From positions 2,108,001-2,172,000 of the forward strand of contig OZ251223.1 of NCBI GenBank assembly GCA_965240325.2: a stretch of DNA of 64,000 nucleotides, written 5' to 3'. Position 1 is the stretch's first letter; every line of letters starts with the position of its first letter. The position numbers and the translations under genes are program-made. This stretch comes from Rebecca billardiae RCC1528. Its lineage: Eukaryota > Protista > Haptophyta. Below are positions 40-59,392 of this stretch, one piece after another. The notes under the pieces are model-generated. The model saw nothing but the letters and a program-made list of their open reading frames with translations. It made no database searches and was not told where the DNA came from.

Positions 40-3000
40 CGACCTCGACGCGAGCGGCCTAACGGGCACCATCCCGACAACGATTGGACATATGAGTGCT
101 CTCACCGCGCTGTGCGCGCACCGCGCGTGCGTGCGCGCATCGCGGAGCGCACTGCGGAGGGCACCATGGACGCGTGGGGCTGATCCGCGCTCGCGCCACG
201 CGACGCGACGCGCGGCAGGCGGCTGCACAACAACACGCTCAGCGGCACGCTGCCCACGGAGATCGGCCTCGCCACGCGGCTCGAGCTGCTGTGAGCGCGC
301 GCGTGCACGCGGCGGGATGCGCGCTGGCGCGCTGGCGCGGGAGCGCTCGGACCTCACAGCCGCGTACCGCCTCTTCCCGTGCGCGCGCGTAGGGAACTAT
401 ACGCCAACGCCCTGACCGGCTTCGTACCCTCCGAGCTCGGGCTGCTGACCGCACTCACCGCCCTGTGAGCGCGCACGCGTGCGGCGGCATGCGCGCCGCG
501 CGACGCCGCCTCCGCGCGCCCGGCGGTTGGCAGTGGGGTGCTCCTGCACGCCGCGCAGCGCGGCGGGCTCACCGCGCGCGCGCGCGCGCGCCGCCCCGCC
601 GCCCTCCTCCTCGTGCAGGCGGATGAGCGACACGCAGCTCTCGGGCGTGCTGCCAGCGGCTGTGCTGGCCCTCCCCAGCCTCAGCACCAAGTGCGTTGCA
701 CGGCGCGCGCGCCCCTCCGCCCGCGCGCCCCTCCGCCGCCGCCACCGCCCAGCCGCGCTGACGCCCGCGCGCTCTGCGCTTCTCCGCGTGCACACACACA
801 CCGCGCGCGCGCGCGCGCAGCGACTGGGCGCGGACGGCACTCTGCGGTGGGACCGTCACCTTTGCGGCGACCGGGACGTACACATTCGACGACTGCAGCC
901 CGCCCAGCCCGCCGCCCTCGCCGCCGCCGAGCCCGCCGCCGAGCCCGCCGCCGAGCCCGCCGCCCTCGCCGCCGCCGCCACTACCGCCGCCGAGCCCGCC
1001 GCCATCGCCGCCGCCGCCACTACCGCCGCCGAGCCCGCCGCCCTCGCCGCCGCCCTCGCCGCCGCCCTCGCCGCCGCCCTCGCCGCCACCACCGTCGCCG
1101 CCACCCAGCCCTCCGCCCTCGCCGCCACCACCGTCGCCGCCACCCAGCCCGCCGCCCTCGCCGCCGCCGCCCTCGCCGCCGCCGAACCCGCCGCCCTCGC
1201 CACCGCCGCCGGGGCCGCCGCCGCGGCCGCCACCGAGCCCGCCGCCGCCGAGCCCGCCGCCGAGCCCGCCGCCGCCGAGCCCGCCCCCCTCGCCGCCGCC
1301 AGCTCCGCCGCCGCCGACCCCGCCGCCGAGCCCACCGCCCTCGCCACCGCCGCCCTCGCCGCCGCCCTTGCCGCCGCCGAGCCCTCCGCCTGCGCCGCCG
1401 CCGAGCCCGCCGCCGCCCTCGCCGCCGCCGAGCCCGCCGCCCTCGCCGCCGCCGCCGGCGCCACCGCCCAGCCCGCCGCCCAGCCCGCCGCCGCCGGCGC
1501 CACCGCCCTCGCCGCCTCCCAGTCCGCCGCCGCCCGTGCCGCCGCCGAGCCCGCCGCCGAGCCCGCCACCGTCGCCGCCGCCGTCAGCGCCGCCGAGCCC
1601 GCCGCCCAGCCCGCCGCCGTCGCCGCCGCCGTCGCCGCCGCCCAGCCCGCCACCGCCGCGCCCGCCGCCCTCGCCGCCGCCCAGCCCGCCGCCGCCGGCG
1701 CCGCCGCCCAGCCCGCCGCCCAGCCCGCCGCCCTCGCCGCCACCCGCGCCTCCGCCCAGCCCGCCGCCGCCCTCGCCGCCGCCCGCGCCGCCACCGAGCC
1801 CGCCGCCACCCTTGCCGCCACCGAGCCCGCCGCCACCTGTGCCGCCCCCGTCGCCACCGCCGAGCCCGCCGCCACCGGCTCCCCCGCCGGCCCCACCGCC
1901 CAGCCCGCCGCCGCCCTCGCCACCGCCCAGCCCACCGCCGAGCCCGCCACCGCCAGGCGACCCGCCGCATCCGCCGCCTCCGCCCAGCCCGCCTCCCAGC
2001 CCGCCGCCCAGCCCGCCGCCCAGCCCGCCACCGGGCCCGCCGCCATCGCCGCCGCCCAGCCCGCCGCCCAGCCCGCCGCCCAGCCCGCCGCCCTCGCCGC
2101 CGCCCAGCCCACCGCCGCCCAGCCCGCCGCCCAGCCCGCCGCCCTCGCCGCCACCCTCGCCGCCACCCAGCCCGCCGCCCTCGCCGCCGCCCTCGCCTCC
2201 GCCAAGCCCACCGCCGAGCCCGCCGCCGCCCACCCCGCCGCCGTCGCCACCGCCGAGCCCGCCGCCGAGCCCGCCGCCGCCCGCGCCGCCACCGAGCCCG
2301 CCGCCGAGCCCACCGCCCTCGCCGCCGCCCTCGCCGCCACCCAGCCCGCCGCCGAGCCCGCCGCCGTCTCCGCCGCCCTCGCCGCCGCCGAGCCCGCCGC
2401 CGAGCCCGCCGCCCTCGCCGCCACCGAGCCCGCCGCCGCCCTCGCCGCCGCCGAGCCCGCCGCCCTTGCCGCCGCCCTCGCCGCCGCCCTCGCCGCCGCC
2501 TTCGCCGCCGCCTTCGCCGCCGCCTTCGCCGCCGCCGAGCCCGCCGCCCTCGCCACCGCCAAGCCCGCCATCACCTCCGCCCAACAACCCACCGCCCAGC
2601 CCGCCGCCCTCGCCGCCGCCCTCGCCGCCGCCCTCGCCACCGCCCAGCCCACCGCCGTCCCCGCCGCCCAGCCCGCCGCCCAGCCCACCTCCGAGCCCGC
2701 CGCCCTCGCCACCGCCGCCCTCGCCGCCGCCCTCGCCGCCGCCCAGCCCGCCGCCCAGCCCACCGCCCAGCCCGCCGCCCGGTCCACCACCCTCGCCGCC
2801 GCCGAGCCCTCCGCCCTCGCCGCCGCCCTCGCCGCCGCCCTCGCCGCCGCCGCCCTCGCCGCCGCCTTCGCCACCACCGAGCCCGCCGCCGAGCCCACCG
2901 CCGAGCCCGCCGCCGTCGCCGCCACCAAGCCCGCCGCCGAGCCCGCCGCCCTCGCCGCCGCCCTCGCCGCCGCCGAGCCCGCCGCCCTCGCCGCCGCCCT

Positions 3001-6000
3001 CGCCACCGCCCTCGCCGCCACCACCGTCGCCGCCACCCCGCCCACCGCCCGCGCCGCCGCCGAGCCCACCGCCCGCGCCGCCGCCCTCACCGCCGCCCTC
3101 GCCACCGCCCTCACCGCCACCGCCCTCGCCGCCTCCTTCGCCACCACCGAGCCCGCCACCGAGCCCGCCGCCGAGCCCGCCGCCCTCGCCGCCACCGAGC
3201 CCGCCGCCGAGCCCTCCGCCCTCGCCGCCGCCGAGCCCGCCACCGAGCCCGCCGCCGCCGAGCCCTCCGCCCTCGCCCCCGCCCAGTCCACCACCCTCTC
3301 CGCCGCCGAGCCCGCCACCCTCGCCCCCGCCCAGTCCACCACCCTCTCCGCCGCCGAGCCCGCCACCCTCGCCCCCGCCCAGTCCACCACCCTCTCCGCC
3401 GCCGAGCCCGCCACCCTCGCCACCGCCCTCGCCGCCGCCGCCGAGCCCGCCGCCGAGCCCGCCGCCCTCACCACCGCCGAGCCCGCCGCCAAGCCCGCCA
3501 CCCTCTCCGCCGCCAAGCCCACCGCCTTCGCCTCCGCCACCGAGCCCGCCGCCCTCGCCGCCGCCCGCGCCACCGCCCTCGCCGCCGCCCTCGCCGCCGC
3601 CCTCGCCGCCGCCCTCGCCGCCGCCGAGCCCTCCGCCACCCTCGCCGCCGCCGTCGCCGCCGCCGTCGCCGCCGCCGAGCCCGCCGCCGAGCCCGCCGCC
3701 GAGCCCGCCGCCTTCACCTCCGCCGAGCCCGCCACCCTCGCCGCCGCCGAGCCCGCCACCCTCGCCGCCGCCATCGCCACCGCCGCCCTCGCCGCCGCCA
3801 AGCCCACCGCCCTTGCCACCGCCCTCGCCGCCGCCCTCGCCGCCGCCGTCGCCGCCGCCGAGCCCGCCGCCAAGCCCGCCGCCCTCGCCACCACCCAGCC
3901 CGCCGCCGAGCCCGCCGCCAAGCCCGCCGCCATCGCCACCGCCGCGCCCGCCGCCGAGCCCGCCGCCTAGCCCGCCACCGCCGAGCCCTCCGCCCTCGCC
4001 ACCGCCAAGCCCGCCGCCATCACCGCCGCCGTCACCGCCGCCGTCACCGCCGCCGTCACCGCCGCCGTCGCCACCGCCAAGCCCACCGCCAAGCCCGCCA
4101 CCAAGCCCACCGCCTTCGCCACCGCCGCCGAGCCCGCCGCCATCGCCGCCGCCGAGCCCGCCGCCGAGCCCGCCGCCAAGCCCGCCGCCTCCAAGCCCGC
4201 CGCCCAGCCCGCCGCCCTCGCCACCGCCGAGCCCGCCACCGAGCCCGCCGCCCTCGCCGCCGCCGAGCCCGCCGCCCTCGCCACCTCCGAGTCCACCGCC
4301 ATCGCCACCGCCGAGTCCGCCACCGAGCCCGCCGCCGTCACCACCGCCTCCTTCGCCGCCGCCGAGCCCGCCACCAAGCCCGCCACCAGTGCCACCGCCG
4401 AGCCCGCCGCCGAGCCCACCACCCTCGCCACCGCCATCGCCGCCCCCAAGCCCACCGCCCTCGCCGCCGCCCAGTCCTCCGCCCTCGCCGCCACCGAGCC
4501 CGCCGCCCTCGCCGCCGCCATCGCCGCCGCCATCACCGCCGCCATCCCCACCGCCGCCGCTCCCGCCGCCGTCGCCGCCACCGAGCCCGCCGCCCTCGCC
4601 GCCGCCGAGCCCGCCGCCGTCGCCGCCGCCGAGCCCGCCGCCGAGCCCGCCGCCAAGCCCGCCGCCGAGCCCGCCCCCGAGCCCGCCGCCCTCGCCACCG
4701 CCAAGTCCACCGCCGCCGAGCCCGCCGCCATCGCCACCGCCGAGCCCGCCGCCGAGCCCGCCGCCCAGCCCACCACCATCGCCACCGCCGAGCCCGCCGC
4801 CCTCGCCGCCGCCCAGTCCGCCACCCAGCCCGCCGCCCAGCCCACCGCCCAGCCCGCCACCCTCGCCACCGCCCCCATCGCCGCCGCCAAGCCCGCCGCC
4901 ATCGCCACCACCGTCGCCTCCGCCGAGCCCTCCGCCGAGCCCGCCTCCCTCGCCGCCACCGTCGCCGCCGCCCTCGCCGCCGCCCTCGCCGCCCCCCTCG
5001 CCGCCCCCCTCGCCGCCGCCGAGCCCGCCGCCGCCGAGCCCGCCGCCGTCGCCACCGCCGAGCCCGCCGCCGAGCCCGCCGCCGAGCCCGCCGCCGTCGC
5101 CGCCGCCGAGCCCGCCGCCGTCGCCGCCTCCGAGTCCACCGCCGCCCAGCCCGCCGCCCAGCCCGCCGCCCAGCCCGCCGCCCAGCCCGCCGCCCAGCCC
5201 GCCGCCGAGCCCGCCGCCGTCGCCTCCACCCTCGCCGCCGCCCAGTCCGCCGCCGAGCCCACCGCCAAGCCCACCGCCCAGCCCGCCGCCCTCGCCGCCA
5301 CCACCCAGCCCGCCACCCAGCCCACCACCCAGCCCGCCGCCTTCGCCGCCGCCGAGCCCGCCCCCCTCGCCGCCGCCGAGCCCGCCGCCCTCACCACCAC
5401 CTAGCCCGCCCCCGCCTAGCCCGCCGCCGAGCCCACCGCCATCGCCGCCGCCCAGTCCGCCGCCGTCGCCACCGCCGAGCCCGCCGCCGAGCCCGCCGCC
5501 GAGCCCGCCGCCCTCGCCACCGCCCTCGCCGCCACCCAGCCCGCCGCCCAGCCCGCCGCCAGGCCCGCCGCCCTCACCGCCGCCGTCGCCGCCGCCGTCG
5601 CCGCCGCCCTCACCGCCGCCCTCACCGCCGCCGAGCCCGCCGCCAAGTCCACCGCCGAGCCCGCCGCCGTCGCCGCCGCCGTCGCCGCCACCGAGCCCGC
5701 CGCCGCCAAGCCCGCCGCCTTCGCCGCCGCCCAGCCCGCCGCCGTCCCCGCCGCCGAGCCCACCGCCGAGCCCACCGCCCTCGCCGCCACCGAGTCCGCC
5801 GCCGAGTCCGCCACCGCCAAGCCCGCCGCCCAGCCCGCCGCCCAGCCCGCCGCCCTCGCCGCCTCCATCACCGCCGCCGCCATCGCCGCCGCCATCGCCG
5901 CCGCCAAGCCCGCCGCCTTCGCCACCGCCAAGCCCGCCGCCCAGCCCGCCGCCCAGCCCGCCGCCCAGCCCGCCGCCCTCTCCACCGCCCAACCCGCCGC

Positions 6001-9000
6001 CAAGCCCGCCGCCAAGCCCGCCGCCAAGCCCGCCGCCAAGCCCGCCGCCTTCGCCGCCGCCGAGCCCTCCGCCGCGCCCACCGCCGTCGCCGCCGCCGAG
6101 CCCGCCCCCCCGCCCACCGCCGAGCCCGCCACCAAGCCCACCACCGAGCCCACCGCCCTCCCCGCCGCCCAGCCCGCCGCCCAGCCCGCCGCCATCGCCG
6201 CCGCCCAGTCCGCCGCCCTCTCCGCCGCCCTCTCCGCCGCCATCGCCGCCGCCCGGTCCGCCGCCCAGCCCACCGCCCAGCCCGCCCCCGTCGCCGCCGC
6301 CGTCGCCGCCGCCGTCACCACCACCCTCGCCGCCGCCCAGCCCGCCGCCCCGCCCGCCGCCCAGCCCGCCGCCGTCGCCGCCGCCATCGCCGCCGCCGTC
6401 GCCGCCGCCGAGCCCTCCGCCGTCGCCGCCCCCGAGCCCACCGCCGAGCCCACCGCCCAGCCCGCCGCCCAGCCCGCCGCCATCCCCGCCGCCGAGCCCA
6501 CCACCGTCGCCACCGCCGTCCCCGCCGCCCAGCCCGCCACCCAGTCCACCGCCCTCGCCACCGCCCTCCCCACCGCCCAGCCCGCCACCCAGCCCACCGC
6601 CGTCGCCGCCGCCGAGCCCGCCGCCGTCGCCGCCGCCGAGCCCGCCGCCAAGCCCGCCCCCCTCGCCGCCGCCCTCCCCGCCGCCGAGCCCTCCGCCCAG
6701 CCCGCCGCCGAGCCCGCCACCGAGTCCACCGCCGTCGCCTCCCCCTAGCCCGCCGCCCAGCCCGCCGCCCAGCCCACCGCCATCGCCGCCGCCGAGCCCG
6801 CCGCCGTCGCCGCCGCCGAGCCCGCCGCCATCGCCACCGCCGAGCCCCCCGCCCAGCCCGCCGCCGAGCCCACCGCCTTCGCCGCCGCCGAGCCCGCCGC
6901 CGAGCCCGCCGCCATCGCCTCCGCCGAGCCCGCCACCATCGCCGCCACCGTCGCCGCCGCCGAGTCCGCCGCCGTCGCCGCCGCCGAGTCCGCCTCCCAG
7001 CCCGCCACCCAGCCCGCCGCCGTCGCCACCGCCGAGCCCACCGCCCAGCCCGCCACCTTCGCCGCCGCCCAGCCCGCCGCCTTCGCCGCCGCCGAGCCCA
7101 CCGCCGTCGCCACCCCCGAGCCCCCCGCCCAGCCCACCGCCCAGCCCACCGCCCAGCCCGCCACCAAGCCCGCCACCATCGCCGCCGCCGAGCCCACCGC
7201 CCTCGCCGCCGCCGAGCCCGCCGCCATCGCCACCTCCGTCGCCGCCGCCGAGCCCGCCGCCGAGCCCGCCACCCTCACCGCCGCCGAGCCCGCCCCCAAG
7301 CCCGCCGCCCAGCCCACCGCCGAGCCCACCGCCGTCGCCCCCGCCGTCGCCACCGCCAAGCCCCCCGCCCTCGCCGCCGCCCTCGCCACCGCCCAGCCCG
7401 CCGCCCTCGCCGCCGCCGAGCCCACCGCCGTCGCCACCCCCGTCTCCGCCGCCGAGCCCGCCCCCGAGTCCACCACCCTCGCCGCCACCGAGCCCGCCGC
7501 CATCGCCGCCGCCCAGCCCGCCACCTTCGCCGCCGCCGAGCCCGCCGCCATCGCCGCCTCCGTCGCCGCCGCCCAGCCCGCCGCCAAGCCCGCCACCCTC
7601 ACCGCCACCGAGCCCGCCGCCGAGCCCGCCGCCGAGCCCGCCACCGTCGCCGCCGCCGAGCCCGCCACCATCGCCGCCGCCGAGCCCGCCGCCATCGCCG
7701 CCGCCGAGCCCACCCCCAAGCCCGCCGCCGAGCCCGCCGCCATCGCCACCGCCGTCGCCGCCGCCGAGCCCGCCACCAAGCCCGCCACCCTCACCGCCGC
7801 CAAGCCCGCCCCCAAGCCCGCCGCCAAGCCCACCGCCGAGCCCACCGCCGTCGCCCCCGCCTAGCCCACCGCCAAGCCCCCCGCCCTCGCCGCCGCCAAG
7901 CCCGCCGCCCTCGCCGCCACCGAGCCCGCCTCCGAGTCCGCCGCCGAGCCCGCCACCGTCGCCGCCGCCGAGCCCGCCACCGTCGCCGCCTCCGTCGCCG
8001 CCGCCGAGCCCACCGCCGAGCCCACCGCCGTCGCCCCCGCCCAGCCCACCGCCAAGCCCGCCGCCCTCGCCGCCACCCAGCCCGCCGCCCTCGCCGCCGC
8101 CGAGCCCGCCGCCGAGTCCACCGCCGTCGCCGCCGCCGTCGCCGCCACCCAGTCCACCGCCCTCGCCGCCACCGAGCCCGCCGCCATCGCCGCCGCCCAG
8201 CCCGCCACCGTCGCCACCTCCGAGCCCACCGCCATCGCCGCCTCCGTCGCCACCGCCCAGCCCGCCGCCAAGCCCGCCACCCTCACCGCCACCGAGCCCG
8301 CCGCCGAGCCCGCCGCCGAGCCCGCCACCGTCGCCGCCGCCGAGCCCGCCACCATCGCCGCCGCCGAGCCCGCCGCCATCGCCGCCTCCGTCGCCGCCGC
8401 CGAGCCCACCGCCGAGCCCGCCACCCTCACCGCCGCCGAGCCCGCCTCCAAGCCCGCCCCCAAGCCCACCGCCAAGCCCACCGCCATCGCCACCGCCGTC
8501 GCCACCGCCAAGCCCCCCGCCCTCGCCGCCGCCCTCGCCGCCGCCAAGCCCGCCGCCGAGCCCACCGCCGAGCCCGCCGCCCGCGCCGCCGCCGTCACCG
8601 CCGCCGTCCCCGCCACCCTCGCCACCGCCGAGCCCGCCCCCGAGCCCACCGCCAAGCCCACCGCCAAGCCCGCCGCCGAGCCCGCCGCCCAGTCCGCCGC
8701 CCTCGCCGCCGCCCAGCCCTCCGCCCTCGCCGCCGCCCAGCCCTCCGCCCTCGCCGCCGCCCTCGCCGCCACCGAGCCCGCCTCCGAGCCCGCCGCCAAG
8801 CCCGCCGCCCGCGCCGCCACCATCGCCGCCGCCATCGCCGCCGCCATCACCGCCGCCCAGCCCGCCTCCTTCGCCACCGCCGAGCCCGCCTCCATCGCCC
8901 CCACCCTCGCCGCCGCCGAGCCCGCCGCCCTCACCACCGCCGAGCCCGCCACCGTCGCCGCCGCCATCGCCGCCGCCGAGCCCGCCGCCTTCGCCGCCGC

Positions 9001-10729
9001 CGTCGCCGCCGCCCTCGCCGCCGCCGAGCCCGCCACCTTCGCCGCCGCCCTCGCCGCCGCCCTCGCCGCCGCCCTCGCCGCCGCCGAGCCCGCCGCCGAG
9101 TCCGCCGCCCTCGCCGCCGCCGAGCCCGCCGCCCTCGCCGCCGCCCTCGCCGCCGCCCTCGCCGCCACCGAGCCCACCGCCCTCGCCGCCGCCCTCGCCG
9201 CCGCCCTCGCCGCCGCCGAGCCCGCCGCCCTCGCCGCCGCCCTCGCCGCCGCCGAGCCCGCCACCATCGCCGCCGCCCTCGCCGCCGCCGAGCCCGCCGC
9301 CCTCGCCGCCGCCGAGCCCGCCGCCGAGCCCACCGCCCTCGCCGCCGCCCTCGCCGCCGCCCTCGCCGCCGCCCTCGCCGCCGCCTTCGCCGCCGCCCTC
9401 GCCGCCGCCGACCCCGCCGCCGACCCCGCCGCCCTCGCCGCCGCCGAGCCCACCGCCGAGCGCGCCGAGCCCGCCGCCCTCGCCGCCGAGCCCGCCGCCC
9501 TCGCCGCCGCCGGGCCCGCCGCCCTCGCCGCCGCCGAGCCCGCCGCCCTCGCCGCCGCCGAGCCCGCCGCCTCCGCCCTCGTCGCCTCCGCCCAGTCGGC
9601 CGCCGCCGGCCCTGCCGCCGGCCGCGCCGTCTGCGCCGCCGACGCCGCCGTCGGCGCCGCCCACACCACCGCCGCCGCCGCGCACGATGCCCTTCCCGCC
9701 GCCCGCGCCGCCGTCCGCGCCGCCGTCCGCGCCGCCGTCCGCGCCGCCGCCGCCGCCGCCGCCGGTGGTGCGTGCGCTCGTCCTGGGCTCGAGCCCCGAG
9801 TCGGTGGTGCTGCAGCCGCAGGCAGCACCGCTGTCGCTCGAAGGCCGTCGGCTCGCGTCCGACGCGCCGCAGCCGCAGCCGGCGCAGCTGCAGCTCAGCG
9901 GCCGCGGCTTTGCGAGTGCGCTCGAGCTGGGCGGCGGCGGCGGCGCGCGCTGCACGCTGCACGCGCCGGACGCATCAGACGCGGCCGTGGCGGCCCTCTC
10001 CGCGCCCGCGCTCGCCAGCCTCAACGGCTCGGTGTGGGGTGACGAGCTGGTGGCGTGCGATCTCGAGATTGCGCGCCTCCGCGCCCTCGGCGCCGGCTCG
10101 TTCAGCGTGGCGCTCTGGCTGGGCGGCGCGCCGGTGCCCGCGCTGTTTGGCGCGCCGCGGCTCGAGCTCGTCGACTTTGGCGCGTCGGTGGCGCTGTGGG
10201 AGCTGCAGCCGCCGCTCGGTCCGCGCAGCGGCGGCACGGCGATCACGCTGCGCGGGCGCGGCTTTGAGCGCGCCGCGGGCGGCGTCGGCGGCGCGCTCTG
10301 CTGCGTCGCGCCCTCGCTCTCGGCGGACGAGTGCCTCGCGCCCGCGGTCGTGCTGCGCCCGCTGAACGGCACGAGCCGTGCGCGCTGCGTCACGCCCGCG
10401 CTGCCCGCCGAGAGCGCGATCTCGTCGCTCGTGCTCGAGCTCGCCGTCGTGGCGGAGGGCGGCGGCGGCGGCGCGGGCGCGGCGCGCGCGGGCGCGCGCA
10501 CGGGCGCCGGGCTGCGCTTCGAGCTGTACGACGACGGCGCGCTCGCGCCCACGGCGCTCAGCCCGGCGGCGGGGCCGGCGCGCACGGCGGTCGTGGCGAG
10601 CGTGATCGGCGCGGGCGCGCTCCTCGGCGGCCCACTCGTGCGCGCGCGCTTTGGCGGCGCGCGGCCCGAGCCGCCGCTCGCGGCCGCGCCCTCCAGCGGG
10701 GTTCTGCTGCTGCGCGCGGCGTACGACGA

Positions 10730-10763
<34 letters not shown>

Positions 10764-11027
10764 GCGCGCCAGCTGTTCGTCTCGCTCAACGGGCAGCAGT
10801 GGAGCCCGCGCGACCCGCGCGGCAACGGCTCCGCGGCCGTGCCCGTCTTCTACACGTTCGAGCCAGCGCCGCACGCGCCCGCGCTCGAGCGCGCGCACTT
10901 CGACGCGGCGGGCGGCGCGTCGCTGCTGCTGCGCTTCGACGCGCAGCCGACCGACCGCGCGGGGATGGGCGGCGGCCTCGGGCCGTGCGCGCCGCTGCTC
11001 GACGACGAGACGCTCGCGCTCGTGCGC

Positions 11028-11058
<31 letters not shown>

Positions 11059-14000
11059 AGGCCGGGAGCGGCGGGCTCTCGTGCGGCTGGGCGGACGACA
11101 GCACACTGGCGGTGCGGCTGCCGCCGAGCACACGCGCCGCGCCCGGCATGCGCGTCGGCGTGCGCGCGGGCGCGGTGCGCCCCGCCGCGTGCGCGTGGGG
11201 CGGCTGTGCCGCCCCCGCCGCCGAGCTCGCCAACGAGGCCGCATCCGTCACCGTCGACCCCGACGCGCCGTGCGGCGACGCGCCGTGCCCGGCGCCCGTC
11301 GCGGTGCTGCGCGCGCCCGACGCGCTCTCGGCGTGCGCCAACGAGACGCTGGAGCTGGACGGCACCGCGTCGAGCGTGGGCGGCGCGGGCGCGCCGGCGT
11401 ACGCGTGGGGGCTGGACGGCAGCGCGTCCGAGGGCGACGCCGACGCGGCCGCGCTCGGCGCCGCGCTGCGCGCGCTGCCGCCCACCGCCGCCTCGGCGCG
11501 CGTGCGGGGTCTGCCCGCCGCCACGTCCGCGCGCGGCTACGTGGTGGCGCTCCGAGTCACGTCGTTCCTCGGCGTGCGCTCCGAGCTGGCGTGGGCGGAG
11601 GTGCGGCGCGCGCGCGCGCCCGCACCCACGCTCACGCTCGAGGGCGCGCCCGACGCGGCCGTCCGCGCGGACGCGCCCATCTCCTTGCGCGCGCGCGTGC
11701 GCCGGCTCGCGCCGTGCTGGCCCGATGCCGCGTCGGCGCGCGTCGTCTTTGAGTGGACGCTTGCGCGCGACGACGGCGGCGGCGGCGGCGCGGTCGCGCT
11801 GGGCGAGTGGGCGCGCGGCGCGGCGCTCGAGCTGCCGGCACACGCGCTCGCGCCCGGCGCGTCGTACAGCCTCGGCGTGCTCGCGCGCATGGCCGCCGAG
11901 CCGCGCGCGCTCGCGCGCGCGTCGGCGCGCCTCAGCGTGCGGCGCGCCTCTCTCGTTGCTCGGCTGAGCGCAGATGCGGCGCGCGCGCCGACGTCGCAGC
12001 CGCTCACGCTCGACGCGCGCGGCTCGTTCGACCCGGCGGACGCGCGCGGCGTGGCCGCGCTCGAGTTCGCGTGGGCGCTGTCCAACAGCTCCTCGGGCGA
12101 GGCCGTGCCGATGCCGGCCAACGCGAGCACGCCGTCGCGCGGCACGCTCACGCTGCCCGCCACCTCGCTGCCGGCCGGCGCGTACACTGTCACTGTCACG
12201 GTGCGCTCCGCGTCCGACGGCGCCGCCGCGGCGGCGAGCGCGGCGCTGTCGCTCGAGCTCGTCGAGAGCGCCGCGCCGCGCGTCAGCCTGCACCCGCTCG
12301 AGCTGCGCGCCGTCAACCCGACCTGGCAGACGAGCGCGGGCCGCCTCGTGCTGCGCGCGGCCGCGCCGCTTGACGTTGGCGCACACGAGTATGAGTGGAG
12401 TGCGCACCTGCAGGGCGCGGGCGGCGCGCTGCTGCCCGCGGGGCTCGCGCTGGACGACACGCTGCGCGTCACGCTCGGCGGCGCGCTCCGCCCCGCCCTC
12501 GCCTTCCGCTCGGGCGCGCTGCGCGCCGGCGCCACCTATCTCTTCAGCCTGGCCGTGCGCGAGCGCTCCGCGCCCGAGCGCGGCACGGCCGTCGCGTCCG
12601 TCGCCGTGACCGTGAACCGCCCGCCGTACGGCGGCGAGCTCGGCGTGCTCGGCGCGGACGGCGCGGACGCGCGCGTCTCCGAGCTCGGCGCCGAGCTCAC
12701 GCTGCGCGCCGCGCGCTGGGCGGACGACGGCCCGGACGAGCTGCCCCTCACCTTCGCCTTCGAGCACCGCCCCGCCAACGGCTCGCGCGCCGCGCCACTC
12801 GGCCCGCCGTCCGCCGAGGCGCCGTCGCTCGGCGGCGTGCTGCTGCCGCCGGGCGAGGGGCAGGTGGGCGTGGTGGTGCGCGACGCGTGGGGCGCGGCCG
12901 CGCGCGCGGCGGCGCGCGTGCTCGTGCGCACGCCGCCGCGCGAGCAGCTCACCGCCGCGGCGCTCGGCGCGCTGCTCGAGCGCGCGCGCCGAGCCCTCAA
13001 CGTTTCCGACACGGCGGGCGCGCTGCGGCTGGTCTCGGCGCTCGGCGCGCTCGACGACGCGGCCGCCGAGCCCGTGCCGGCGGCCGCGCTGCTGGGCGTG
13101 ACGCGCGACGCGGCCGCGCTCGCGCCGCGCACGCGCGACGCGCGCGCGCAGCAGGCCGCCGCGCTATCCGCGGTCGCGGGCGCGCGCGCCGGCCGCGCGC
13201 TCGACAACGACGGCGACGCGCAGGCGGAGGCCATGCGCCAGGCGGCCGAGCTCGCGGCGGAGGCGCGCGGCGCGGGGGAGGGCGTGGACGCCGAGAGCGC
13301 GGCCGCGCTGCTCGCCGCCGCCGACGCCGCCCTCCTCGCCAACGCCACCTCGGGCGTGCGCCCCGAGCACGCCGCCGCGCTCGGCGCGTCGGCGGCGCGC
13401 CTGGGCTCCGAGCTCGCGCGCGCGCTGCTCGCGGGCTCGAGCGCGGACGAGCCCTCCGTGCAGCTGCGCGGCGCCGCGATCTCGCTCACCGCGGCGCGCG
13501 TGCGCGCGGACACGCTCGGCGCCGCGGCGGACGGCTCCTCCGGCAGCGCCGCCGGCTGGATCGCCCTCGGCGCCGACGGCGCGCAGGGCGGCGCCGCGCA
13601 GCAGACGCAGCAGGGCGGGGGCGGCATCCTCCTGCCGCCGTCCGCGCTCGGCGCGCAGCCGGCCGGCGCGCTCGGCTCGGAGGGGGACGTGGACGTGGTG
13701 CTCGCGTCGATCGCGGCGCGGCCGGCCGACGTGCACGCCGCGCTCGCGAACGGCACCGCGCTCGCGGGGCCGCGCATCGTGACCGCGATGCTCAGCGCGA
13801 CGCTGTACGCGCCGGGCGGCGGCGCGCTGCGCGTCGCGTCGCTCGACGAGCCGATCGTCCTCGGCCTGCCGCCCCTGCTGGGCGGCGCAGGCGGCGCGCT
13901 GCTCCTGCAGGAGCCGGGCGCGGGCGAGGCGGACTGGGTGGTGCAGTGCCGCTTCTGGGACGAGGCGGAGGCGCGCTGGTCCGCCCGGGGCTGCGCGAGC

Positions 14001-16672
14001 GCGCGCGCGCCCGAGGGCGCGGCCGAGGGGTCGGCCGCGCTGTACTGCGCGTGCGACCACCTCACCACCTTTGCCGGGCTGGCGTTCCCGCGCTCGGCCG
14101 AGGAGGCGGCGGACGACGCGGCGGCCGTGCGGCTGAACACGTTCAGCGCGGAGCAGGCCGGTGCGGCGCTCGCCGACCCCGTGCAGGCCGCGCGGCAGAA
14201 CCAGACGATCTTCCGACTCGTATACCTGCTCGCGGGCGCGAACGCGCTCGCGTTGCTGCTCGCCGTGCGCGCCGACGCGAAGGGCGCGGCGGCGTACGCG
14301 CGCTGGCACGCCTCGGAGCTGCGCACGAGCGGGATGCCGCCCTCGCCGCCCACGCGCTGCAGCTCCGGCTCCTTCTCCGCCGCCTCGCGCACCGCGCCCA
14401 CGCGAAGCTCAAAGGGCGGCGGCTCGTTTGGTGCGCAGCCGCCGCTGCCGCAGCCGGGCTCGCGGCGCTGGCTGTGCCCGCCGCCGCCGCCGCCGCCGGC
14501 GCTGCCGCGGCCGCCCTCGGATGCGGGCGCGGCCGCCGACGCCGCGGAGCCGCGCGCCGGCCTGGGGGCCGACGCCGACGTCGAGGTGCTCAGCACAGTG
14601 CAGTGCGTGCGCGCGCGCCGCCGCGAGCGCGAGCGCGAGGCCTCGGAGGCGGGCGCGCGGGGCGGCAGCCCAGAGGCGCGCCGAGAGCCCGGGGCGACGG
14701 AGCCGTCGTCGCCCTCGCCGCCGACGACGACGGTGGCGCAGGCCACGCTCGGCGCCGCCGCCCCCTCCGTCGCCGTGCCGCGGCGCGGCTCGCAGGGCGG
14801 CGCGCACACGCCGCCGCCGCCGCCGCCGCCGCCGCGCGACGACGCGCAGGCAGCCGTGCTGCAGGCGCGCGCGGCCGTGCGCCGCGCGCGCTCGGTCGCG
14901 ATCGCGCGGCAGCGCTCGTGGAGCGACGAGCGGTTCCGGCCGAGCAGGGCGGCGCGCGCGGGCACGCGCCGCGCGGCGGCGGCGGCGCTCGCGCAGCGCG
15001 CGTGGGACGAGCACCCGCTGCTCGTGCTCCTGTTTGCGCCCGCGATGCGCGCGGTCGCGAAGGCCGAGCTCACGCAGTCGCTCTTCGACATGGCGGCGCT
15101 GCAGCTGGTGCTCGAGTGCATGCTGCACGGCGCGGCCGAGCCGGGCGCGGGCGGGCGCGCGCTCACGCTCGCGCTGTACGCGTGCGTGGGCGCGGCGGTG
15201 GCGCTGCCCGCGCTCGCCACGTTCCGCGCGCTGTGGCGCGCGGCGCACGCGGGCGAGTGCGACGCGCCGCCCGCGCGCCTCTACTCTGCGCTCAGCGCCG
15301 CGCTCGAGGGGCAGCTCGCGCAGGGCGCGGGCGCGCGCGCCGCTCGGCTCTCGGCCATCGTGGAGTCTGCGCACGAGCTCGGCACGCTCAAGGGCGCCAC
15401 GCAGCTGGGCTCGCTCGCGGAGCCGGGGGAGGAGGCGGAGGACAGCGACGAGTCGGGCAGTGAGGACGCGCCCGCGCCCGCGGCGCGCGGCCAGCCGCCC
15501 AAGGGCGCGGCGGCTGCAGCCTCGCTCGGCGCGGCGAGCGCGTGCGTGCAGCGGCTGCTCGGCGCGGCGTGCTGGGGCGCGCCCGCGCGGGACACGCCGC
15601 CGCGCTCGCCCACGCCGCCCGCGCGGCTGAGCGCGGCGGGCGCGGCCGGCGGCCCGCTCGCGCCGCGCGCCGCGCTGCCGTCCGCGCCGCCGCGCGCGGC
15701 CGGCAGCGCGCGCGTGCTGCCCACGCGCTCCGGCTCGGCGGGCGCGGCGCGCGGTGGCGCGGGCATCATCGCGCCGCTGCAGCCCGCGGGCGACGCGCTG
15801 AGCGAGCGGCTGCGCGCGCACGAGGCGGCGCGAGCCTCGCAGCAGGGGGACGAGGAGGAGGAGCGGGGCAGCGCGCCGCAGCGCCGCGCTCGACCGGGCA
15901 CTGCGCCACACGCGCGCTCGGCCGCGGTGTATGCTGGACTGCCGCCGCCGCCCATCGCCGCACCGCCGCCGGCGCCGACGTGCCGCGGCCGCGGCCGCGC
16001 GCGCTCGGCGAGCGCGCTGCCCCCATCCGAGCGAGCCAAGCTCGCGCCGCGCCGCGCCGCGCGTCTGAGCAACTCGGGCGACGACCATTCGCCCTCCCCG
16101 GGGAGCGCGGGCGGACGACCCGCCCGGCTTGGGCCCGAGTGGGGCTCGGCGCCGCCGGGCTCGGCGCTGAGCGCGCAGCCGCGGCCGCTCGGCGCGCCGG
16201 CCTCGCAGCCGCCGCCCTCGCCGCCGCCCTCGCCGCCGCCCGCCGCGCCGCCCGCCGCGCCGCCGCGCCGCACGACAGGCCGGCTGCCGCCGCCGGGCGC
16301 GCCCAACGCGCCACCGGCGCAGACGAGCGGCCGCGTGGCGCTGCCGCCGTCGGCCGCGTCGGCGGGCTGCGCGCCGCGACGCTCGTCGTGCCGGCTGCCG
16401 CCGCCGCCGCCGCCCGCGCCCGCGCAGCAGCAGCCGGGCGCGTCGCAGCCGCCTCGGCGCCCGCCGCTGCCGCACGGGACCGCCGCCGCCTCGTTCGGTG
16501 GCGGCGGCACCGGCGGCGCGCGGGGCAGCCAGCCGCCGCCACCGCCGCCGCCTCCTAAGGGCCTTGGCGCGCGCGGCGCCGCGCACCGCCCGCCGACGAC
16601 TGCGCCACAGCCGGCCGTGGCCGCGCGCTCGGCCTGGGCGCAGGGGCCAGCCCAGCCCGGGAGCACCGACCG

Positions 16673-16704
<32 letters not shown>

Positions 16705-18404
16705 GCGGGGCAGACGAGAAGGAAGAAGCGGACGCGGAGGCGGAGGCGGAGCGCGCAGCGGCGCCCTCGGCGGATGAGCTGTTGGCTGCGCAGCGGCCGT
16801 CGAGCGCCCCGGGAGACGTGGAGGGCAGGCGGGAGCGCGGTGATGCGGCCGCGCCCGCGGCCGCGCACGAGGCCGGCGCGGCCGAGCCCGAGCTGCCGCC
16901 GCCGCCGCCCTCGGAGCCCCGAGAGTCCGGCTGCTCCGCCTCGGCCTCTGGCCGCGGCACCTCCGCGGCGCTCAGCGTCGGCGTCGGCAGCGCCGCGCCC
17001 GCGCCGGAGGCAGCGGACGGCGGCGAGCTCAAGCCGACGCCCTCGCCGGTGAAGGAGGCTGTGACGCCGCCGTCCGCAGCGAGCTTTGCGGCGCGCCGCG
17101 CGAGCCGCGAGGCCAAGTTCGCCGCCGCCCGCTCGTCGCCGCGCGAGCACGGCGCGGCCGCGCCCGCCGCCGCGCCGGCCGCACGCGCGGCCGCGCCCGC
17201 CGCGCCGCCCGTCGCCCCGCCGCCGCCGCGCGCGATCGGCCGCGGCGCGCCGCTGCTGTGCGGCTCCTTCCGGCCGTCTGCGGAGGAGTGGAGGCTGGAG
17301 CCCTCGCCGCCGCGCAGGCAGGGCGGCGGCGCGGCGGGGCAGCCGAGTGCGCCGCGGCGCGTGGCGCAGGAGGCGGCGCGCGCGCCCGCCGCGCCCGCCG
17401 CCGCGCCCACGCCCGCGCCCGCTGCGGCGGTGCCGCCCGCGCTCAGCGCTGCTGCCGACGGCGCAGACTTGGCCCCGGCGGCCGCGCCCGCCGCGGCCGC
17501 GTGCGAGCGCGCGGCAGCAGCCACGCCGCTGCCGCTGCCCGCCGCCGAGCCGGCCGCTCGCCCGTGCTCCGACGGCAGGGCCGCTGCTCCATGCGCGCCA
17601 TCGGGCGCGCGGTCCGCCTTGCGTCTCCGCCCGCAAGCCTGCCTCGCCGCCCCCGCCGCAGCGCCGCCACGCGACACGGCCGCCGGCCGCGCGGCCGCCG
17701 GGGGCTGCTCGCAGCGCGCCCACGGCGCGCACAGCCGCGCGCCGCGCCCGCCGTCCGGCCGCGCGCGCGCGCTGCCGCCGCTCTCTGAGCTGGAGGGCCA
17801 CGCGCTGCGCGCGCTCGTCACCCTCTTCGACTCGGACGGCCGCGGCGCGCTCGTGCTCAGCTCGGTGCGGCTGCTGATGGTCGAGCTGGGGGACCCGATG
17901 ACCCCGCCGGAGCAGCGCGCGCTGCTGCGGGCGCTCGCGGGCGGCAAGACGAGCGCCAAGGGCGGCGCGCGCGCCGCGGAGCTGCAGGTGAGCAGCGCCG
18001 ACCTGTGCGAGTGGTACGCGCGCGCCAAGGCGGCGGACGCGCGCGCCGCGCGCCGAGCCGGCCGCGGCCCGGCGTGGCGGCGCGCGCGGCTCGGCCTCGC
18101 GTGGATCGCGATGCTCGGCATCTTCGCCGCGCTGTGCGCGCTCGCCATCGTGTACGGCACCGTGCTCGGCGAGGCGCAGATGCGGGACATGCTCGGCTCG
18201 TGGGCGCTGTCGCTGTCGGGCAGCATGCTCGTGCAGGAGGGGCTGGTCCTCGCGGTCGCGCGGCTGCTCACCTCCGCCAAGGACGGCGCGCGCGATGGCC
18301 TGTTCGCGCGCGTGCCCAGGCTCCGGCTCGGCGCCGTCGTCGACGAGATTCGGGCCGCGCCTGCGCGCGCGCTCGGCGCGGTGCGCTTCCACTTCCGAGG
18401 TTAA
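40..18404 (+). CDS. Giant LRR / Ser-Pro3 extensin-rod / IPT / REJ / GAIN-GPS / 5-TM polycystin-1-like membrane protein (5' end outside window). Exons 40-111, 219-290, 393-464, 619-690, 821-18404
   Basis: Four 72-nt AG/GT-bounded exons each encode a plant-type LRR (DLDASGLTGTIPTTIGHMSALTAL; RLHNNTLSGTLPTEIGLATRLELL; ELYANALTGFVPSELGLLTALTAL; RMSDTQLSGVLPAAVLALPSLST). They splice in frame to exon 821-18404 (same frame as ORF 1368..18404). SPPP repeat ~895-9764. IPT/TIG motifs (LQPPLGPRSGGTAITLRGRGF; LFVSLNGQQWS). REJ motifs (LTLDARGSFDP..LEFAW; VTVNRPPYGG..WADD..LPLTFAF). GPS motif CRFWD..WSARGC..CACDHLTTFAGL at ~13947-14080. Five hydrophobic helices. EF-hand FDSDGRGAL at ~17826. Confidence 0.88.
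895..9764 (+). repeat. Coding tandem repeat, (Ser-Pro3)n with 12-nt unit, ~2,950 codons
   Basis: Continuous AGC/TCG-CCG-CCG-CCN units, with occasional Pro4, Ala, Arg, Gly or Asn substitutions. Confidence 0.97.
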
Positions 18405-18907
18405 CCAATCATGTTCTCATGATGCCTGATGAGCATCAGCCCGGTGATCGTCGATGAGGCCCCGGTCAGGTCTGAGGTCATCACGCCGATGAGCCGTCAT
18501 CACGCGACGATGACGACTAGCTTACGACAAGGCTGGAGTCGGGTTTGAGCGTATGCCTGATGCAGATATGCAGGACGAAAAATTAAATCGTCGTCGATCA
18601 TCAATAATATAAGCAAGTTGTCACATCGCGAGTGCCCACCGCCAGAAAATCCGAAGATCGACGCCCAGTTCTGTGCAGCTCGCGACAGCGGCGGTTTGGG
18701 ACGATGAGCTACGCAGCAGGCCGCATCATCATGATGATGGCATATGCTGTCGGTTGGTGCAGTAGCGTATCAATCATATATATAGATGCATGCCGCGCGC
18801 AGTCAGTCGCAGCTGTGCACGCATGCGCGCACTACACGGGCTGCGCGAGTTATCTCTTATTGTTTGTCTGACTGAGTGCGAGTCGTGCCCCAGCCACCAG
18901 CTGCTGG

Positions 18908-19120
18908 CGGCAATGCAACTGACACTCATAGTTCCGGCGGAATAAAGGGCAATATTTCTGAGCAGACTATATGTTCAAGCTCGAAAACGGCAATATTCTT
19001 GAACTAAGTAGCTAGCGTGAAGGGTGATTCGTTTGAAACCAGTATTTGAGGGGCAATATTGTTGACACACTATCAACAATAAGCGGCAATATTCTTGACC
19101 CATAGCGTCAACGGCAATAC
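18908..19120 (+). repeat. Degenerate AT-rich short tandem array, core GGCAATATT(C/G)TTGA, ~6-7 units of 28-41 nt
   Basis: GGCAAT at 18909, 18948, 18989, 19052, 19085, 19113. Four copies continue ATT..TGA. A more degenerate copy lies at ~19022. Confidence 0.7.
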
Positions 19121-19134
19121 ATACATGCAGCTGA

Positions 19135-19138
<4 letters not shown>

Positions 19139-19216
<78 letters not shown>

Positions 19217-19226
19217 CTCTCTCTCT
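19139..19226 (+). repeat. (CT)n microsatellite, ~37 perfect units plus a short interrupted tail
   Basis: Directly visible. Confidence 0.98.
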
Positions 19227-19655
19227 ACGATGAATAACTGATGACGATGTTACGATCGGATGACATGCTATACAGTAGCGCTGCTACTAGCGGCGGATAG
19301 CAATGGTACGTAGCGCAGTAGTCAGTCAGCTCAGCTGATAGCCCGACATCGCGCTGCGCGGTAAGATCCCAAACCAGCTGCGGAGCAAAGCACAGGATTG
19401 GTCGGATTGGAGTCCGGCTAGGCTCAGCTGCTGCAATAATGAGGACGATGGCCGATGACGCCGACGGCCAACGGGGCAGTTTGCCTCGTGCGAGCAGGCC
19501 TGCCAGCGGTCAAAGGCAATCTGGAAGCGGCGATGTGGTGTCGTGGTCACGTACTTCTTGCCCGCGGACACAATCGATTATTGTGCCAATAACACCACAT
19601 ATATTGCTATAGACGTCGTCCATATGACTACGATCGTCAACGCGCACGCATATGC

Positions 19656-58877: not shown

Positions 58878-59392
58878 TGCCAAATCGTAGACAAGAGCAG
58901 TCCCGGTTCAAGACGACGCCGTGCTACGGCCCTTCCGCTTGGCCGTGCTGAAATCCCTTCGTTGCGGGGCACGATCTGATGATCGATGACGATGACGATG
59001 ATGATGATGACAATATTGACAGCAATGAGTGGCTGCCACGACCCGCCTGACATACGCGGGTTGTTCGCTTAGCCTCCGGCAGTACTAGCTAACGATGATT
59101 GCGTAGCGGCACCGCGAGCCACCGGTACTCAGTCATATCCGTGGCGTGATGGCCATGCACTCGCTGGCCGGTGGCAGCCCTCGCTCTCCGTCCGGCCTCC
59201 GGGGCGCGGAGCCTCGGATAAATGCCATGCGCCCGGATCGGACTCGCGGCCCGGCCCGGCCGGCCGAGTGATGGTGACCGAGCGGGGCGGTGTCCGGGTC
59301 TGTGAGCGCTGCAACAGTATCCGGGCGGCATCGGAACGCTCGGGCACATGGCAGCAGGCGTCCCACCAGCTGGAATGGCGCGGCTGTGCGCC

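What the first reader, a model, noticed from the sequence alone, without database searches (positions are those of the whole stretch)
40..18404. LRR-extensin-polycystin chimera: an LRR head on a ~2,950-aa SPPP stalk, anchored by a REJ/GAIN/5-TM polycystin-1-like base
Seen: plant-type LRRs, ~2,950 aa of Ser-Pro3, IPT/TIG and REJ motifs, an intact GPS (HL|T, followed by the Stachel-like TTFAGL), and five TMs whose motifs (HPLL..F; LAW..YG..LG; W..S...S.LVQE) match polycystin-1 TM1-5. Known: animal PKD1 is LRR-...-REJ-GAIN-11TM; plant LRX proteins are LRR+extensin but are not membrane-anchored; Chlamydomonas mastigonemes are built on a polycystin-like protein with a long hydroxyproline PPII helix (Mstax/MST3). 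Inference: at ~0.31 nm per PPII residue the stalk is ~0.9 um long. This could be a self-cleaving surface filament or mechano-/ligand sensor, for example the core of fine flagellar hairs. I do not recognise this architecture as described.
Basis: partly seen in the sequence, partly recalled or inferred. Interest (0 to 1): 0.9.

Follow-up and report, generated by a model that had tools for sequence, protein, structure and literature searches.

The report
Giant stalked channel-less polycystin-1-like receptor
This alga gene encodes a surface protein of at least 5,956 residues: a leucine-rich-repeat head on a roughly 0.9-micrometre serine-proline rod, anchored by the self-cleaving front half of a polycystin-1-type receptor without any ion-channel part. 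No paper I found describes this layout, and public genome annotations cut it short.

Summary
On the + strand, four 72-nt exons each encode one plant-type LRR. They join a single 17.6-kb exon that encodes about 2,950 residues of Ser-Pro3, a TIG-like stretch, a REJ domain (Pfam E 2e-25), a GAIN domain with an intact GPS (HL|T) and five membrane helices.

- The rod is coding. 660 SPPP units use 88 different 12-mers and both serine codon families.
- The window's own GAIN model matches adhesion-GPCR GAIN structures (E 6e-10).
- A model of a relative's five-helix base has human polycystin-1 residues 3063-3610 as its best match among 48,161 chains (Z 14.6).
- PLAT, the six-helix channel half and the TOP domain are absent.
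- The EF-hand loops are degenerate in this copy.

The gene belongs to a Pavlovales-wide family. In public Diacronema lutheri and Pavlovales sp. CCMP2436 contigs the same proline rod sits, unannotated, in frame before the annotated REJ genes.

The scan has noted, and other agents have followed up, similar genes at many other places in this genome.

No RNA or protein evidence was obtained, and the gene's 5' end lies outside the window. Function is inferred: most likely an adhesion or force sensor, alternatively a surface or flagellar hair.

Verdict: a new variant of a known kind.

The parts
40..111 (+). LRR exon 1 (72 nt, one 24-residue plant-type LRR). Preceded by the AG of an intron that begins outside the window.
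219..290 (+). LRR exon 2 (72 nt). The intron at 112-218 has GT-AG borders.
393..464 (+). LRR exon 3 (72 nt). The intron at 291-392 has GT-AG borders.
619..690 (+). LRR exon 4 (72 nt). The intron at 465-618 has GT-AG borders.
821..898 (+). Start of the giant last exon (821-18404). It encodes a Cys-containing cap after the LRRs that runs directly into the rod.
899..9764 (+). Ser-Pro3 rod: 2,956 residues in 725 units. It is degenerate at the N-terminal end and nearly perfect over the last ~1,000 residues.
9765..11804 (+). Ig/TIG-like ectodomain stretch (weak Pfam TIG at 10203-10409). It aligns with TIG-bearing relatives.
11805..13037 (+). REJ domain
   Evidence: E 2.2e-25
12939..14090 (+). GAIN domain: helical subdomain A about 12954-13427, beta subdomain B about 13458-14090. 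Pfam GPS lies at 13944-14075. The predicted cleavage is between L (14061-14063) and T (14064-14066). The strand TFAGLAFP is modelled inside the domain.
14208..14267 (+). TM1
15009..15236 (+). Conserved H-x-L-L motif, TM2 (about 15069-15134) and TM3 (15159-15236)
15237..17777 (+). Long low-complexity cytosolic loop. It stays in frame, with GC3 0.88-0.97.
17778..18035 (+). Degenerate EF-hand pair. It aligns with canonical pairs in relatives, but both loops lack key ligand residues.
18096..18269 (+). TM4 (18096-18158) and TM5 (about 18189-18269)
18402..18404 (+). Stop codon. GC drops to about 0.6 downstream.

Best explanation
Shown:
- This is one real gene of a very GC-rich Pavlovales-type haptophyte.
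- Its product runs, outside to inside: plant-type LRR head, about 2,950 residues of Ser-Pro3, TIG-like modules, REJ, GAIN with an intact autoproteolysis site, then five membrane helices.
- In a relative, those helices fold like the N-terminal membrane domain (TM1-5) of polycystin-1.
- There is no PLAT domain, no channel half and no TOP domain.

Inferred:
- The rod is hydroxylated and O-glycosylated like algal hydroxyproline-rich glycoproteins and forms a stiff polyproline-II helix. At 0.31 nm per residue it would hold the LRR head about 0.9 micrometre from the membrane.
- The GAIN domain cleaves itself at HL|T but stays assembled.
- Pulling on the head, by a bound ligand, another cell, a particle or flow, strains or removes the N-terminal fragment and exposes the buried strand TFAGLAFP.
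- That changes the five-helix base and its long cytosolic loops, so the protein works as an adhesion or force sensor.
- In relatives the loops carry an IQ-type motif and a working EF-hand pair, which points to a calcium-linked output. In this copy both are degenerate.
For: Gene model:
- One LRR per 72-nt GT-AG exon, with the cap and SPPP in the same exon.
- No stop from 840 to 18401.
- GC3 is 0.88-1.00 in this frame in every 300-nt bin from 9765 to 18401.
- 660 SPPP units use 88 distinct 12-mers, with Ser coded by AGY 356 times and TCN 304 times. The longest exact repeat is 134 nt.

Domains:
- REJ and GPS pass Pfam cut-offs.
- The window's GAIN model (pLDDT 78, pTM 0.72) matches BAI3, BAI2, latrophilin, CELSR1, GPR110 and GPR126 GAIN structures, with E from 6e-10 to 6e-6.
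- The family profile hits ADGRG6 by sequence at 3e-12.
- The base model of relative P0012 has the PC1/PC2 complex chain 8z6b_A, residues 3063-3610, as top hit: Z 14.6 among 48,161 chains.
- AlphaFold DB top hits are mouse PKD1L3 1246-1617, human PKD1L2, a PLAT-domain protein and a GAIN-B protein.

Family:
- 533 relatives at E<=0.001. The closest are from Diacronema lutheri and Pavlovales sp. CCMP2436, with the layout TIG-REJ-GPS-TM-EF-hand-TM.
- One relative is an MMETSP transcript.

Recurrence of the rod:
- A D. lutheri contig (L003) has a single 5,890-codon ORF: signal peptide, then a 5.4-kb SPPP block, then the annotated REJ gene.
- CCMP2436 has an SPPP run in frame right before the annotated start.

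Rod length: 429 residues correspond to 133 nm in Chlamydomonas MST3 (PMC11015965).
Against: - There is no RNA or protein evidence for this gene. No usable sequencing run was listed, and the one run laid gave only spurious short matches.
- No protein more than 40% identical exists in the 1.84-billion-representative library, so no public annotation or transcript-derived protein represents this gene.
- The 5' end and signal peptide are outside the window.
- The polycystin-1 match of the base is fold-level only and was made on a relative 26% identical over aligned columns. Its Z is only slightly above what helical models can reach by chance (note). Foldseek against PDB found only calmodulin, and sequence searches found no PKD1.
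- In polycystin-1 the exposed stalk is thought to act through the TOP domain (PMC9672506), which is absent here. The signalling step therefore has no direct precedent.
- Hydroxylation and glycosylation in haptophytes were not tested.
Confidence: 0.6

Rival explanations
1. It is mainly a structural filament: the core of the fine flagellar hairs or of a cell-surface coat. The glycosylated rod is the functional part. The REJ-GAIN-5TM base serves only as an anchor, and the GPS site allows shedding or renewal.
For: - Chlamydomonas mastigonemes are built on a single hydroxyproline-rich protein, MST3, anchored by a polycystin-family membrane domain (PMC11015965).
- Free glycofibrils made of tetrapeptide repeats exist in pond water (PMC11725842).
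- The D. lutheri paralogue in L003 has no globular head, only a signal peptide followed by the rod.
- This copy has lost the EF-hand ligand residues.
- From my own knowledge, untested here: pavlovophytes bear fine hairs on the long flagellum.
Against: - An LRR head at the tip argues for ligand binding.
- The GAIN fold, GPS residues, buried strand and all five helices are conserved across the family. A passive anchor would not need that.
- No localisation data exist.
Confidence: 0.25
2. The gene model is partly an artefact. The LRR exons or the rod belong to another gene, the rod length is an assembly error, or parts of the long low-complexity loops are introns that happen to stay in frame.
For: - In 75-88% GC sequence, stop-free frames arise easily. 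Other frames and the opposite strand also give ORFs of 1,000-3,400 codons.
- No transcript evidence was obtained.
- The public D. lutheri models leave out the rod and also splice out about 190 codons.
Against: - The LRR cap and SPPP share one exon.
- Synonymous variation preserves SPPP only in this frame.
- GC3 periodicity persists through the loops.
- The longest exact repeat is 134 nt, so long reads can place the array uniquely.
- The same rod-before-REJ layout appears at independent loci in two public genomes.
Confidence: 0.1
3. It is an unexpressed or decaying family member whose signalling parts are eroding.
For: - The EF-hand loops and the IQ-type motif are degenerate compared with relatives.
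- No matching transcript-derived protein exists in the libraries.
Against: - 5,956 codons run without a stop or frameshift.
- Codon bias is strong throughout.
- The GPS residues are intact.
Confidence: 0.05

Closest known systems
Polycystin-1 family (PKD1, PKD1L1-3, PKDREJ, sea-urchin REJ proteins)
   Same: - REJ domain followed by GAIN/GPS with HL|T.
- A first block of five membrane helices with a similar fold.
- An N-terminal LRR module, which human PKD1 also has (PMC9672506).
   Different: - No PLAT domain in the first cytosolic loop.
- No TM6-11 channel-like half, no TOP domain and no recognised C-terminal tail.
- TIG-like modules instead of PKD repeats.
- A 2,950-residue Ser-Pro3 rod.
- An EF-hand pair (degenerate here) in the TM3-TM4 loop.
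- No sequence-level similarity in the membrane part.
Chlamydomonas MST3 (Mstax), the axial protein of the mastigoneme (PMC11015965; bioRxiv 10.1101/2024.12.24.630281)
   Same: A giant proline-rich protein whose N-terminus points away from the cell. It has a polyproline-II rod hundreds of nanometres long, anchored by a polycystin-family membrane domain with a long cytosolic part.
   Different: - The MST3 anchor is a PKD2-like channel domain completed by SIP and joined to PKD2.
- MST3 has no REJ, GAIN or GPS.
- It is coated by MST1.
- It comes from a green alga, not a haptophyte.
Plant LRX proteins (LRR-extensins)
   Same: A plant-type LRR module N-terminal to a Ser-Pro(n) extensin-like region.
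   Different: - LRX proteins are secreted wall proteins without a membrane anchor.
- Their extensin part is short and carries Tyr cross-link motifs.
- Here the rod has no Tyr at all and ends in a membrane receptor.
Adhesion GPCRs
   Same: A GAIN domain with a buried last strand after the cleavage site, and large modular adhesive ectodomains. The window's model and profile match their GAIN structures.
   Different: Five helices of polycystin-1 type rather than a seven-helix secretin-like bundle.
Chlamydomonas sexual agglutinins and TLP-4 glycofibrils
   Same: - Agglutinins: a head-on-a-shaft hydroxyproline-rich fibril on the flagellar surface (my own knowledge).
- TLP-4: a tetrapeptide-repeat chain inside a glycan sheath (PMC11725842).
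   Different: Neither has a REJ/GAIN/TM base. The TLP-4 sequence and source organism are unknown.

Membership tests
Polycystin-1 family | REJ domain | tested here: met
   Pfam PF02010: E 2.2e-25, 89.6 bits against a cut-off of 25.
Polycystin-1 family | GAIN domain with GPS (Cys/Trp pattern and HL|T) just before TM1 | tested here: met
   Pfam GPS scores 32.3 bits against a cut-off of 22.5. The window's model matches solved GAIN domains at E 6e-10. The family profile hits ADGRG6 at 3e-12.
Polycystin-1 family | N-terminal membrane domain TM1-5 | tested here: met
   Fold level only, and on relative P0012.
- Top of 48,161 chains is PC1 residues 3063-3610, Z 14.6.
- PKD1L3 and PKD1L2 top the AlphaFold DB Swiss-Prot search.
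- PLAT, GAIN-B and PKD1L2a entries are among the top hits in AFDB clusters.
- The window's five helices align with the modelled ones.
- No sequence-level match was found.
Polycystin-1 family | PLAT domain between TM1 and TM2 | tested here: not met
   No Pfam PLAT in the window or in eleven relatives.
Polycystin-1 family | TM6-11 channel-like half with TOP (polycystin) domain | tested here: not met
   There is no PKD_channel hit. The protein ends about 45 residues after TM5.
Adhesion GPCR | Seven-helix bundle after the GAIN domain | tested here: not met
   Five helices, with no 7tm Pfam hit.
Extensin / hydroxyproline-rich glycoprotein | Tandem Ser-Pro3-4 units | tested here: met
   725 units, of which 610 are SPPP and 48 SPPPP.
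Extensin / hydroxyproline-rich glycoprotein | Tyr-based cross-link motifs | tested here: not met
   No Tyr in the rod.
Extensin / hydroxyproline-rich glycoprotein | Proline hydroxylation and O-glycosylation | not testable with these tools
   Needs amino-acid and glycan analysis of the protein.
Plant LRX | Secreted, with no membrane anchor | tested here: not met
   REJ-GAIN-5TM follows the rod in the same exon.
MST3/Mstax-type mastigoneme axis | PKD2-like channel membrane domain | tested here: not met
   No PKD_channel hit. The base matches PC1 TM1-5 instead.
EF-hand calcium sensor | Canonical 12-residue loops with acidic residues at positions 1, 3 and 12 | tested here: not met
   The window has no Pfam EF-hand. 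Its loops read DSDGRGALVLSS and KTSAKGGARAAE, against canonical loops in relatives. Relatives pass Pfam.
Plant-specific LRR | 24-residue repeat with an L.G.[ILV]P core | tested here: met
   Four consecutive repeats read directly from the spliced exons. Single 23-residue pieces are too short for Pfam.

The most novel reading that the evidence does not exclude
Pavlovophyte haptophytes carry a large, unannotated repertoire of 'head-on-a-pole' receptors. Interchangeable heads hold out on micrometre-long glycosylated polyproline rods: LRR here, and propellers or none elsewhere. Force on the rod is read by GAIN-domain cleavage and a channel-less polycystin-1 base. This would be a force- or contact-sensing antenna system, possibly identical with the flagellar hairs. 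It would show what the polycystin-1 front half does on its own, without a channel.
Probability: 0.25. Interest if true: 0.85.

Novelty: new variant of a known kind. Interest (0 to 1): 0.7.

Why it matters
- **Polycystin-1 biology.** It would be a natural experiment on polycystin-1: the REJ-GAIN-TM1-5 half working without PLAT, TOP or channel. What that half contributes is still debated in kidney-disease research.
- **Range of the principle.** With Chlamydomonas MST3 it makes two cases of a polycystin-family membrane anchor carrying a micrometre-scale hydroxyproline-type rod. Here the lineage is different and the polycystin subfamily is the other one.
- **Annotation.** Repeat masking before gene prediction (as in the D. 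lutheri annotation, PMC8379373) may explain why public annotations lack the rods. If so, the surface proteome of these algae is systematically under-described.

Tried and rejected
- **Sequencing runs.** None was listed for 10000-14300. One run of unknown type was listed for 17600-19600. When laid, it gave a single true 187-nt piece downstream of the stop and only short GC-rich chance matches in the gene. It gave no splice or expression information.
- **Giant relatives.** A word-based search for relatives of 3,220-10,244 residues was blank. This probably reflects truncated public models rather than absence.
- **Base versus PDB by sequence.** Searches of the base and of REJ-GAIN against PDB sequences were blank. 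The profile of the base hit only calmodulins.
- **Base versus structures.** Foldseek against PDB and the ESM Atlas shape search returned only EF-hand matches for the base model.
- **LRR exons.** Pfam on single LRR exons was blank because the pieces are too short.
- **Species identification.** A neighbour gene (56277-58880, minus strand) was searched to pin down the species and found nothing. The organism is therefore given only as Pavlovales-like, based on the nearest relatives and on a GC content of 74.7% against 73-75% in D. lutheri loci.
- **Rejected ideas.** The rod is not non-coding simple sequence, and another frame or the antisense strand is not the real reading frame. The base is not a polycystin channel.
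Full report
**What is in the sequence**

The first 18.4 kb of the window is 77-89% GC. The + strand has no stop in one frame from nt 840 to 18401.

Upstream of that frame lie four exons of exactly 72 nt: 40-111, 219-290, 393-464 and 619-690. They are separated by GT-AG introns of 107, 102, 154 and 130 nt, all in the same phase.

Spliced together, they give four consecutive 24-residue repeats of the plant-specific LRR type. A cap containing two Cys follows, and in the same exon it runs directly into SPPSPPPSPPP.

Nt 1-39 is the end of an intron. The gene therefore begins outside the window, and its start codon and signal peptide are unseen. The part inside the window encodes 5,956 codons.

**The rod**

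Nt 899-9764 encodes 2,956 residues in 725 proline units. Of these, 610 are SPPP and 48 are SPPPP. The rest are mostly single substitutions of the Ser. There is no Tyr, Lys or Cys.

The N-terminal part is degenerate. The last ~1,000 residues are almost perfect, which suggests recent expansion.

The array is translated in this frame and is not a DNA simple repeat:
- 660 SPPP units are written with 88 different 12-mers.
- Ser is coded by AGY 356 times and by TCN 304 times.
- Variation sits at third positions.
- The other five frames would give heterogeneous Ala-, Arg- or Gly-rich strings.
- The longest exact internal repeat is only 134 nt, so long reads can place the array uniquely.

**The ectodomain base**

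- Pfam finds REJ (E 2.2e-25) and GPS (E 1.4e-7), both above their curated cut-offs.
- TIG is below cut-off, and no PLAT, PKD_channel or EF-hand is found.
- The GPS has its four Cys, two Trp and H-L|T-T-F.
- I modelled the window's own stretch 12939-14330 with 16 relatives as alignment. The model has pLDDT 78 and pTM 0.72. It shows six to seven helices, then a beta sandwich whose last strand is TFAGLAFP, then TM1.
- Foldseek against PDB returns GAIN domains as its first ten hits: BAI3 at 6e-10, then BAI2, latrophilin-1 and -3, CELSR1, GPR110, GPR126 and CD97. GPR56 follows at rank 14.
- The family profile hits ADGRG6 by sequence at 3e-12.

**The membrane base**

Hydropathy shows three strong and two weaker helices. 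TM1 directly follows the GPS. TM2-3 come about 250 residues later. TM4-5 lie at the very end, after a low-complexity loop of about 850 residues that contains a degenerate EF-hand pair.

GC3 stays at 0.88-1.00 in this frame through every 300-nt bin, loops included. I therefore read 821-18404 as one exon.

The window's base is too long to fold in one job. I folded the compact relative P0012 (610 residues) with 14 relatives, including the window, as alignment. Mean pLDDT was 68, with most helices at 80-95.
- A Foldseek-independent scan of 48,161 PDB chains put the polycystin-1 chain of the PC1/PC2 complex first. This is 8z6b_A residues 3063-3610, the TM1-5 region, at Z 14.6 over 197 aligned residues. 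EF-hand matches follow, from Z 12.0 down.
- In AlphaFold DB Swiss-Prot the top hit is mouse PKD1L3 residues 1246-1617, and human PKD1L2 is fourth.
- In AFDB clusters the non-EF-hand top hits are GPS-, PLAT- and GAIN-B-domain proteins and a PKD1L2a entry.

The caveats are real:
- E-values are modest.
- Z is only just above what helical models can reach by chance.
- Foldseek against PDB saw only calmodulin.
- No sequence search linked the base to PKD1.
- The modelled protein is a relative.

The window's GPS strand, all five helices and the EF region do align block by block with that relative.

**Family and recurrence**

A full HMMER scan with the window's REJ-GPS part found 533 proteins at E<=0.001. 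The best is only 40% identical.

Named members come from Diacronema lutheri (KFE25_002410, _012990, _001592) and Pavlovales sp. CCMP2436. One is an MMETSP transcript, so at least one family member is expressed.

The closest relatives scanned, and the family alignment, give the layout TIG(n)-REJ-GPS-TM1-IQ-type motif-TM2/3-EF-hand pair-TM4/5. PLAT and channel domains were not seen in any of them. More distant REJ-GPS proteins also lack the channel and carry other cytosolic modules.

None of the first 70 public proteins has a proline run longer than about 160 residues. This is an annotation gap, not a real absence:
- In the public D. lutheri contig JAGTXO010000041 there is a single ATG-started ORF of 5,890 codons.
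- It reads signal peptide, then a 5.4-kb SPPP block, then the annotated REJ/GPS/EF-hand gene. The annotation begins only after the block.
- In Pavlovales sp. CCMP2436 an SPPP-rich run, broken by an assembly gap, lies in frame immediately before the annotated Met.

The D. lutheri genome paper soft-masked repeats before gene prediction and mentions neither proline-rich nor REJ proteins (PMC8379373).

The window's GC (74.7%) matches D. lutheri loci (73-75%). The absence of any near-identical protein means either another strain or species, or an unannotated gene.

**Earlier notes of this scan**

First readers listed many similar giant 'polycystin-1-like receptor on an SPPP stalk' genes at other places in this genome, with other heads.

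Three follow-up agents reached the same reading at other loci. I count these as leads, not support. My own tests of recurrence are the two public loci above.

**How it most likely works**

Shown:
- The domain order.
- The GAIN fold with intact cleavage residues and a buried last strand.
- The five-helix base.
- The absence of a channel half.

Inferred:
- The rod is hydroxylated and glycosylated and forms a polyproline-II helix. At 0.31 nm per residue, as measured for MST3 where 429 residues give 133 nm (PMC11015965), it would be about 0.9 micrometre long.
- The GAIN domain self-cleaves.
- Tension on the LRR head exposes the strand after the cleavage site and switches the base.

In polycystin-1 that strand is thought to act via the TOP domain (PMC9672506). 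TOP is absent here, so the last step has no direct precedent.

Relatives carry an IQ-type motif and canonical EF-hands in the cytosolic loops, which hints at a calcium-linked output. This copy has lost the key loop residues.

The main rival is a purely structural role as a hair or surface-coat filament, in the manner of MST3 or the TLP-4 glycofibril.

**Comparison and novelty**

The protein works most like a cross between polycystin-1 or an adhesion GPCR (GAIN-gated sensor) and MST3 (rod on a polycystin-family anchor).

It is not a full member of the polycystin-1 family, because PLAT and the channel half were tested and are absent. It is not an LRX, because it is membrane-anchored and lacks Tyr motifs.

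Literature searches found no description of this layout. I rate it a new variant of a known kind.

Its interest is reduced by the lack of any expression or protein evidence, and by the fact that this locus is one of many paralogues already flagged in the scan.

Noticed in passing
window 19733-29350, minus strand: A second giant open frame (3,205 codons) lies tail-to-tail with this gene. It has its own SPPP block at 23537-29203. Its 1,267-residue non-repeat C-terminal part has no Pfam match.
   Followed up: partly
L003 4144-21816 (D. lutheri JAGTXO010000041.1): The public model KFE25_012990 starts at 10001. A single 5,890-codon ORF begins at an ATG at 4144, with a signal peptide and a 5.4-kb SPPP block. 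The annotation is therefore truncated by about 1,950 codons.
   Followed up: yes
L005 8395-10001 (Pavlovales sp. CCMP2436 MU631364.1): SPPP-rich coding sequence, interrupted by an assembly gap, runs in frame into the annotated start of KAJ1635852.1.
   Followed up: partly
alignment A2, between TM1 and TM2; window about 14835-14900: The family consensus has an IQ-type motif (IQRxxRGxxxR) in the first cytosolic loop. It is degenerate in the window's copy.
   Followed up: partly
window 899-9764: Repeat purity shows a gradient. Variant units are dense in the first ~1,800 residues, with SPPPP recurring every 13-53 residues. They are almost absent from residues ~1,820 to 2,840. This suggests recent expansion or homogenisation at the membrane-proximal end.
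   Followed up: partly
protein P0054 (JGI metagenome, 2,588 aa): A distant REJ-GPS membrane protein carries four TRAF-type zinc fingers at its cytosolic end. Channel-less REJ-GPS bases are therefore combined with different cytosolic modules.
   Followed up: no
L001 4800-5340 (Logan ERR14847148 contig): The relative P0001 is mis-called across two short introns inside its GPS. The true protein continues into a five-helix base without EF-hands.
   Followed up: partly
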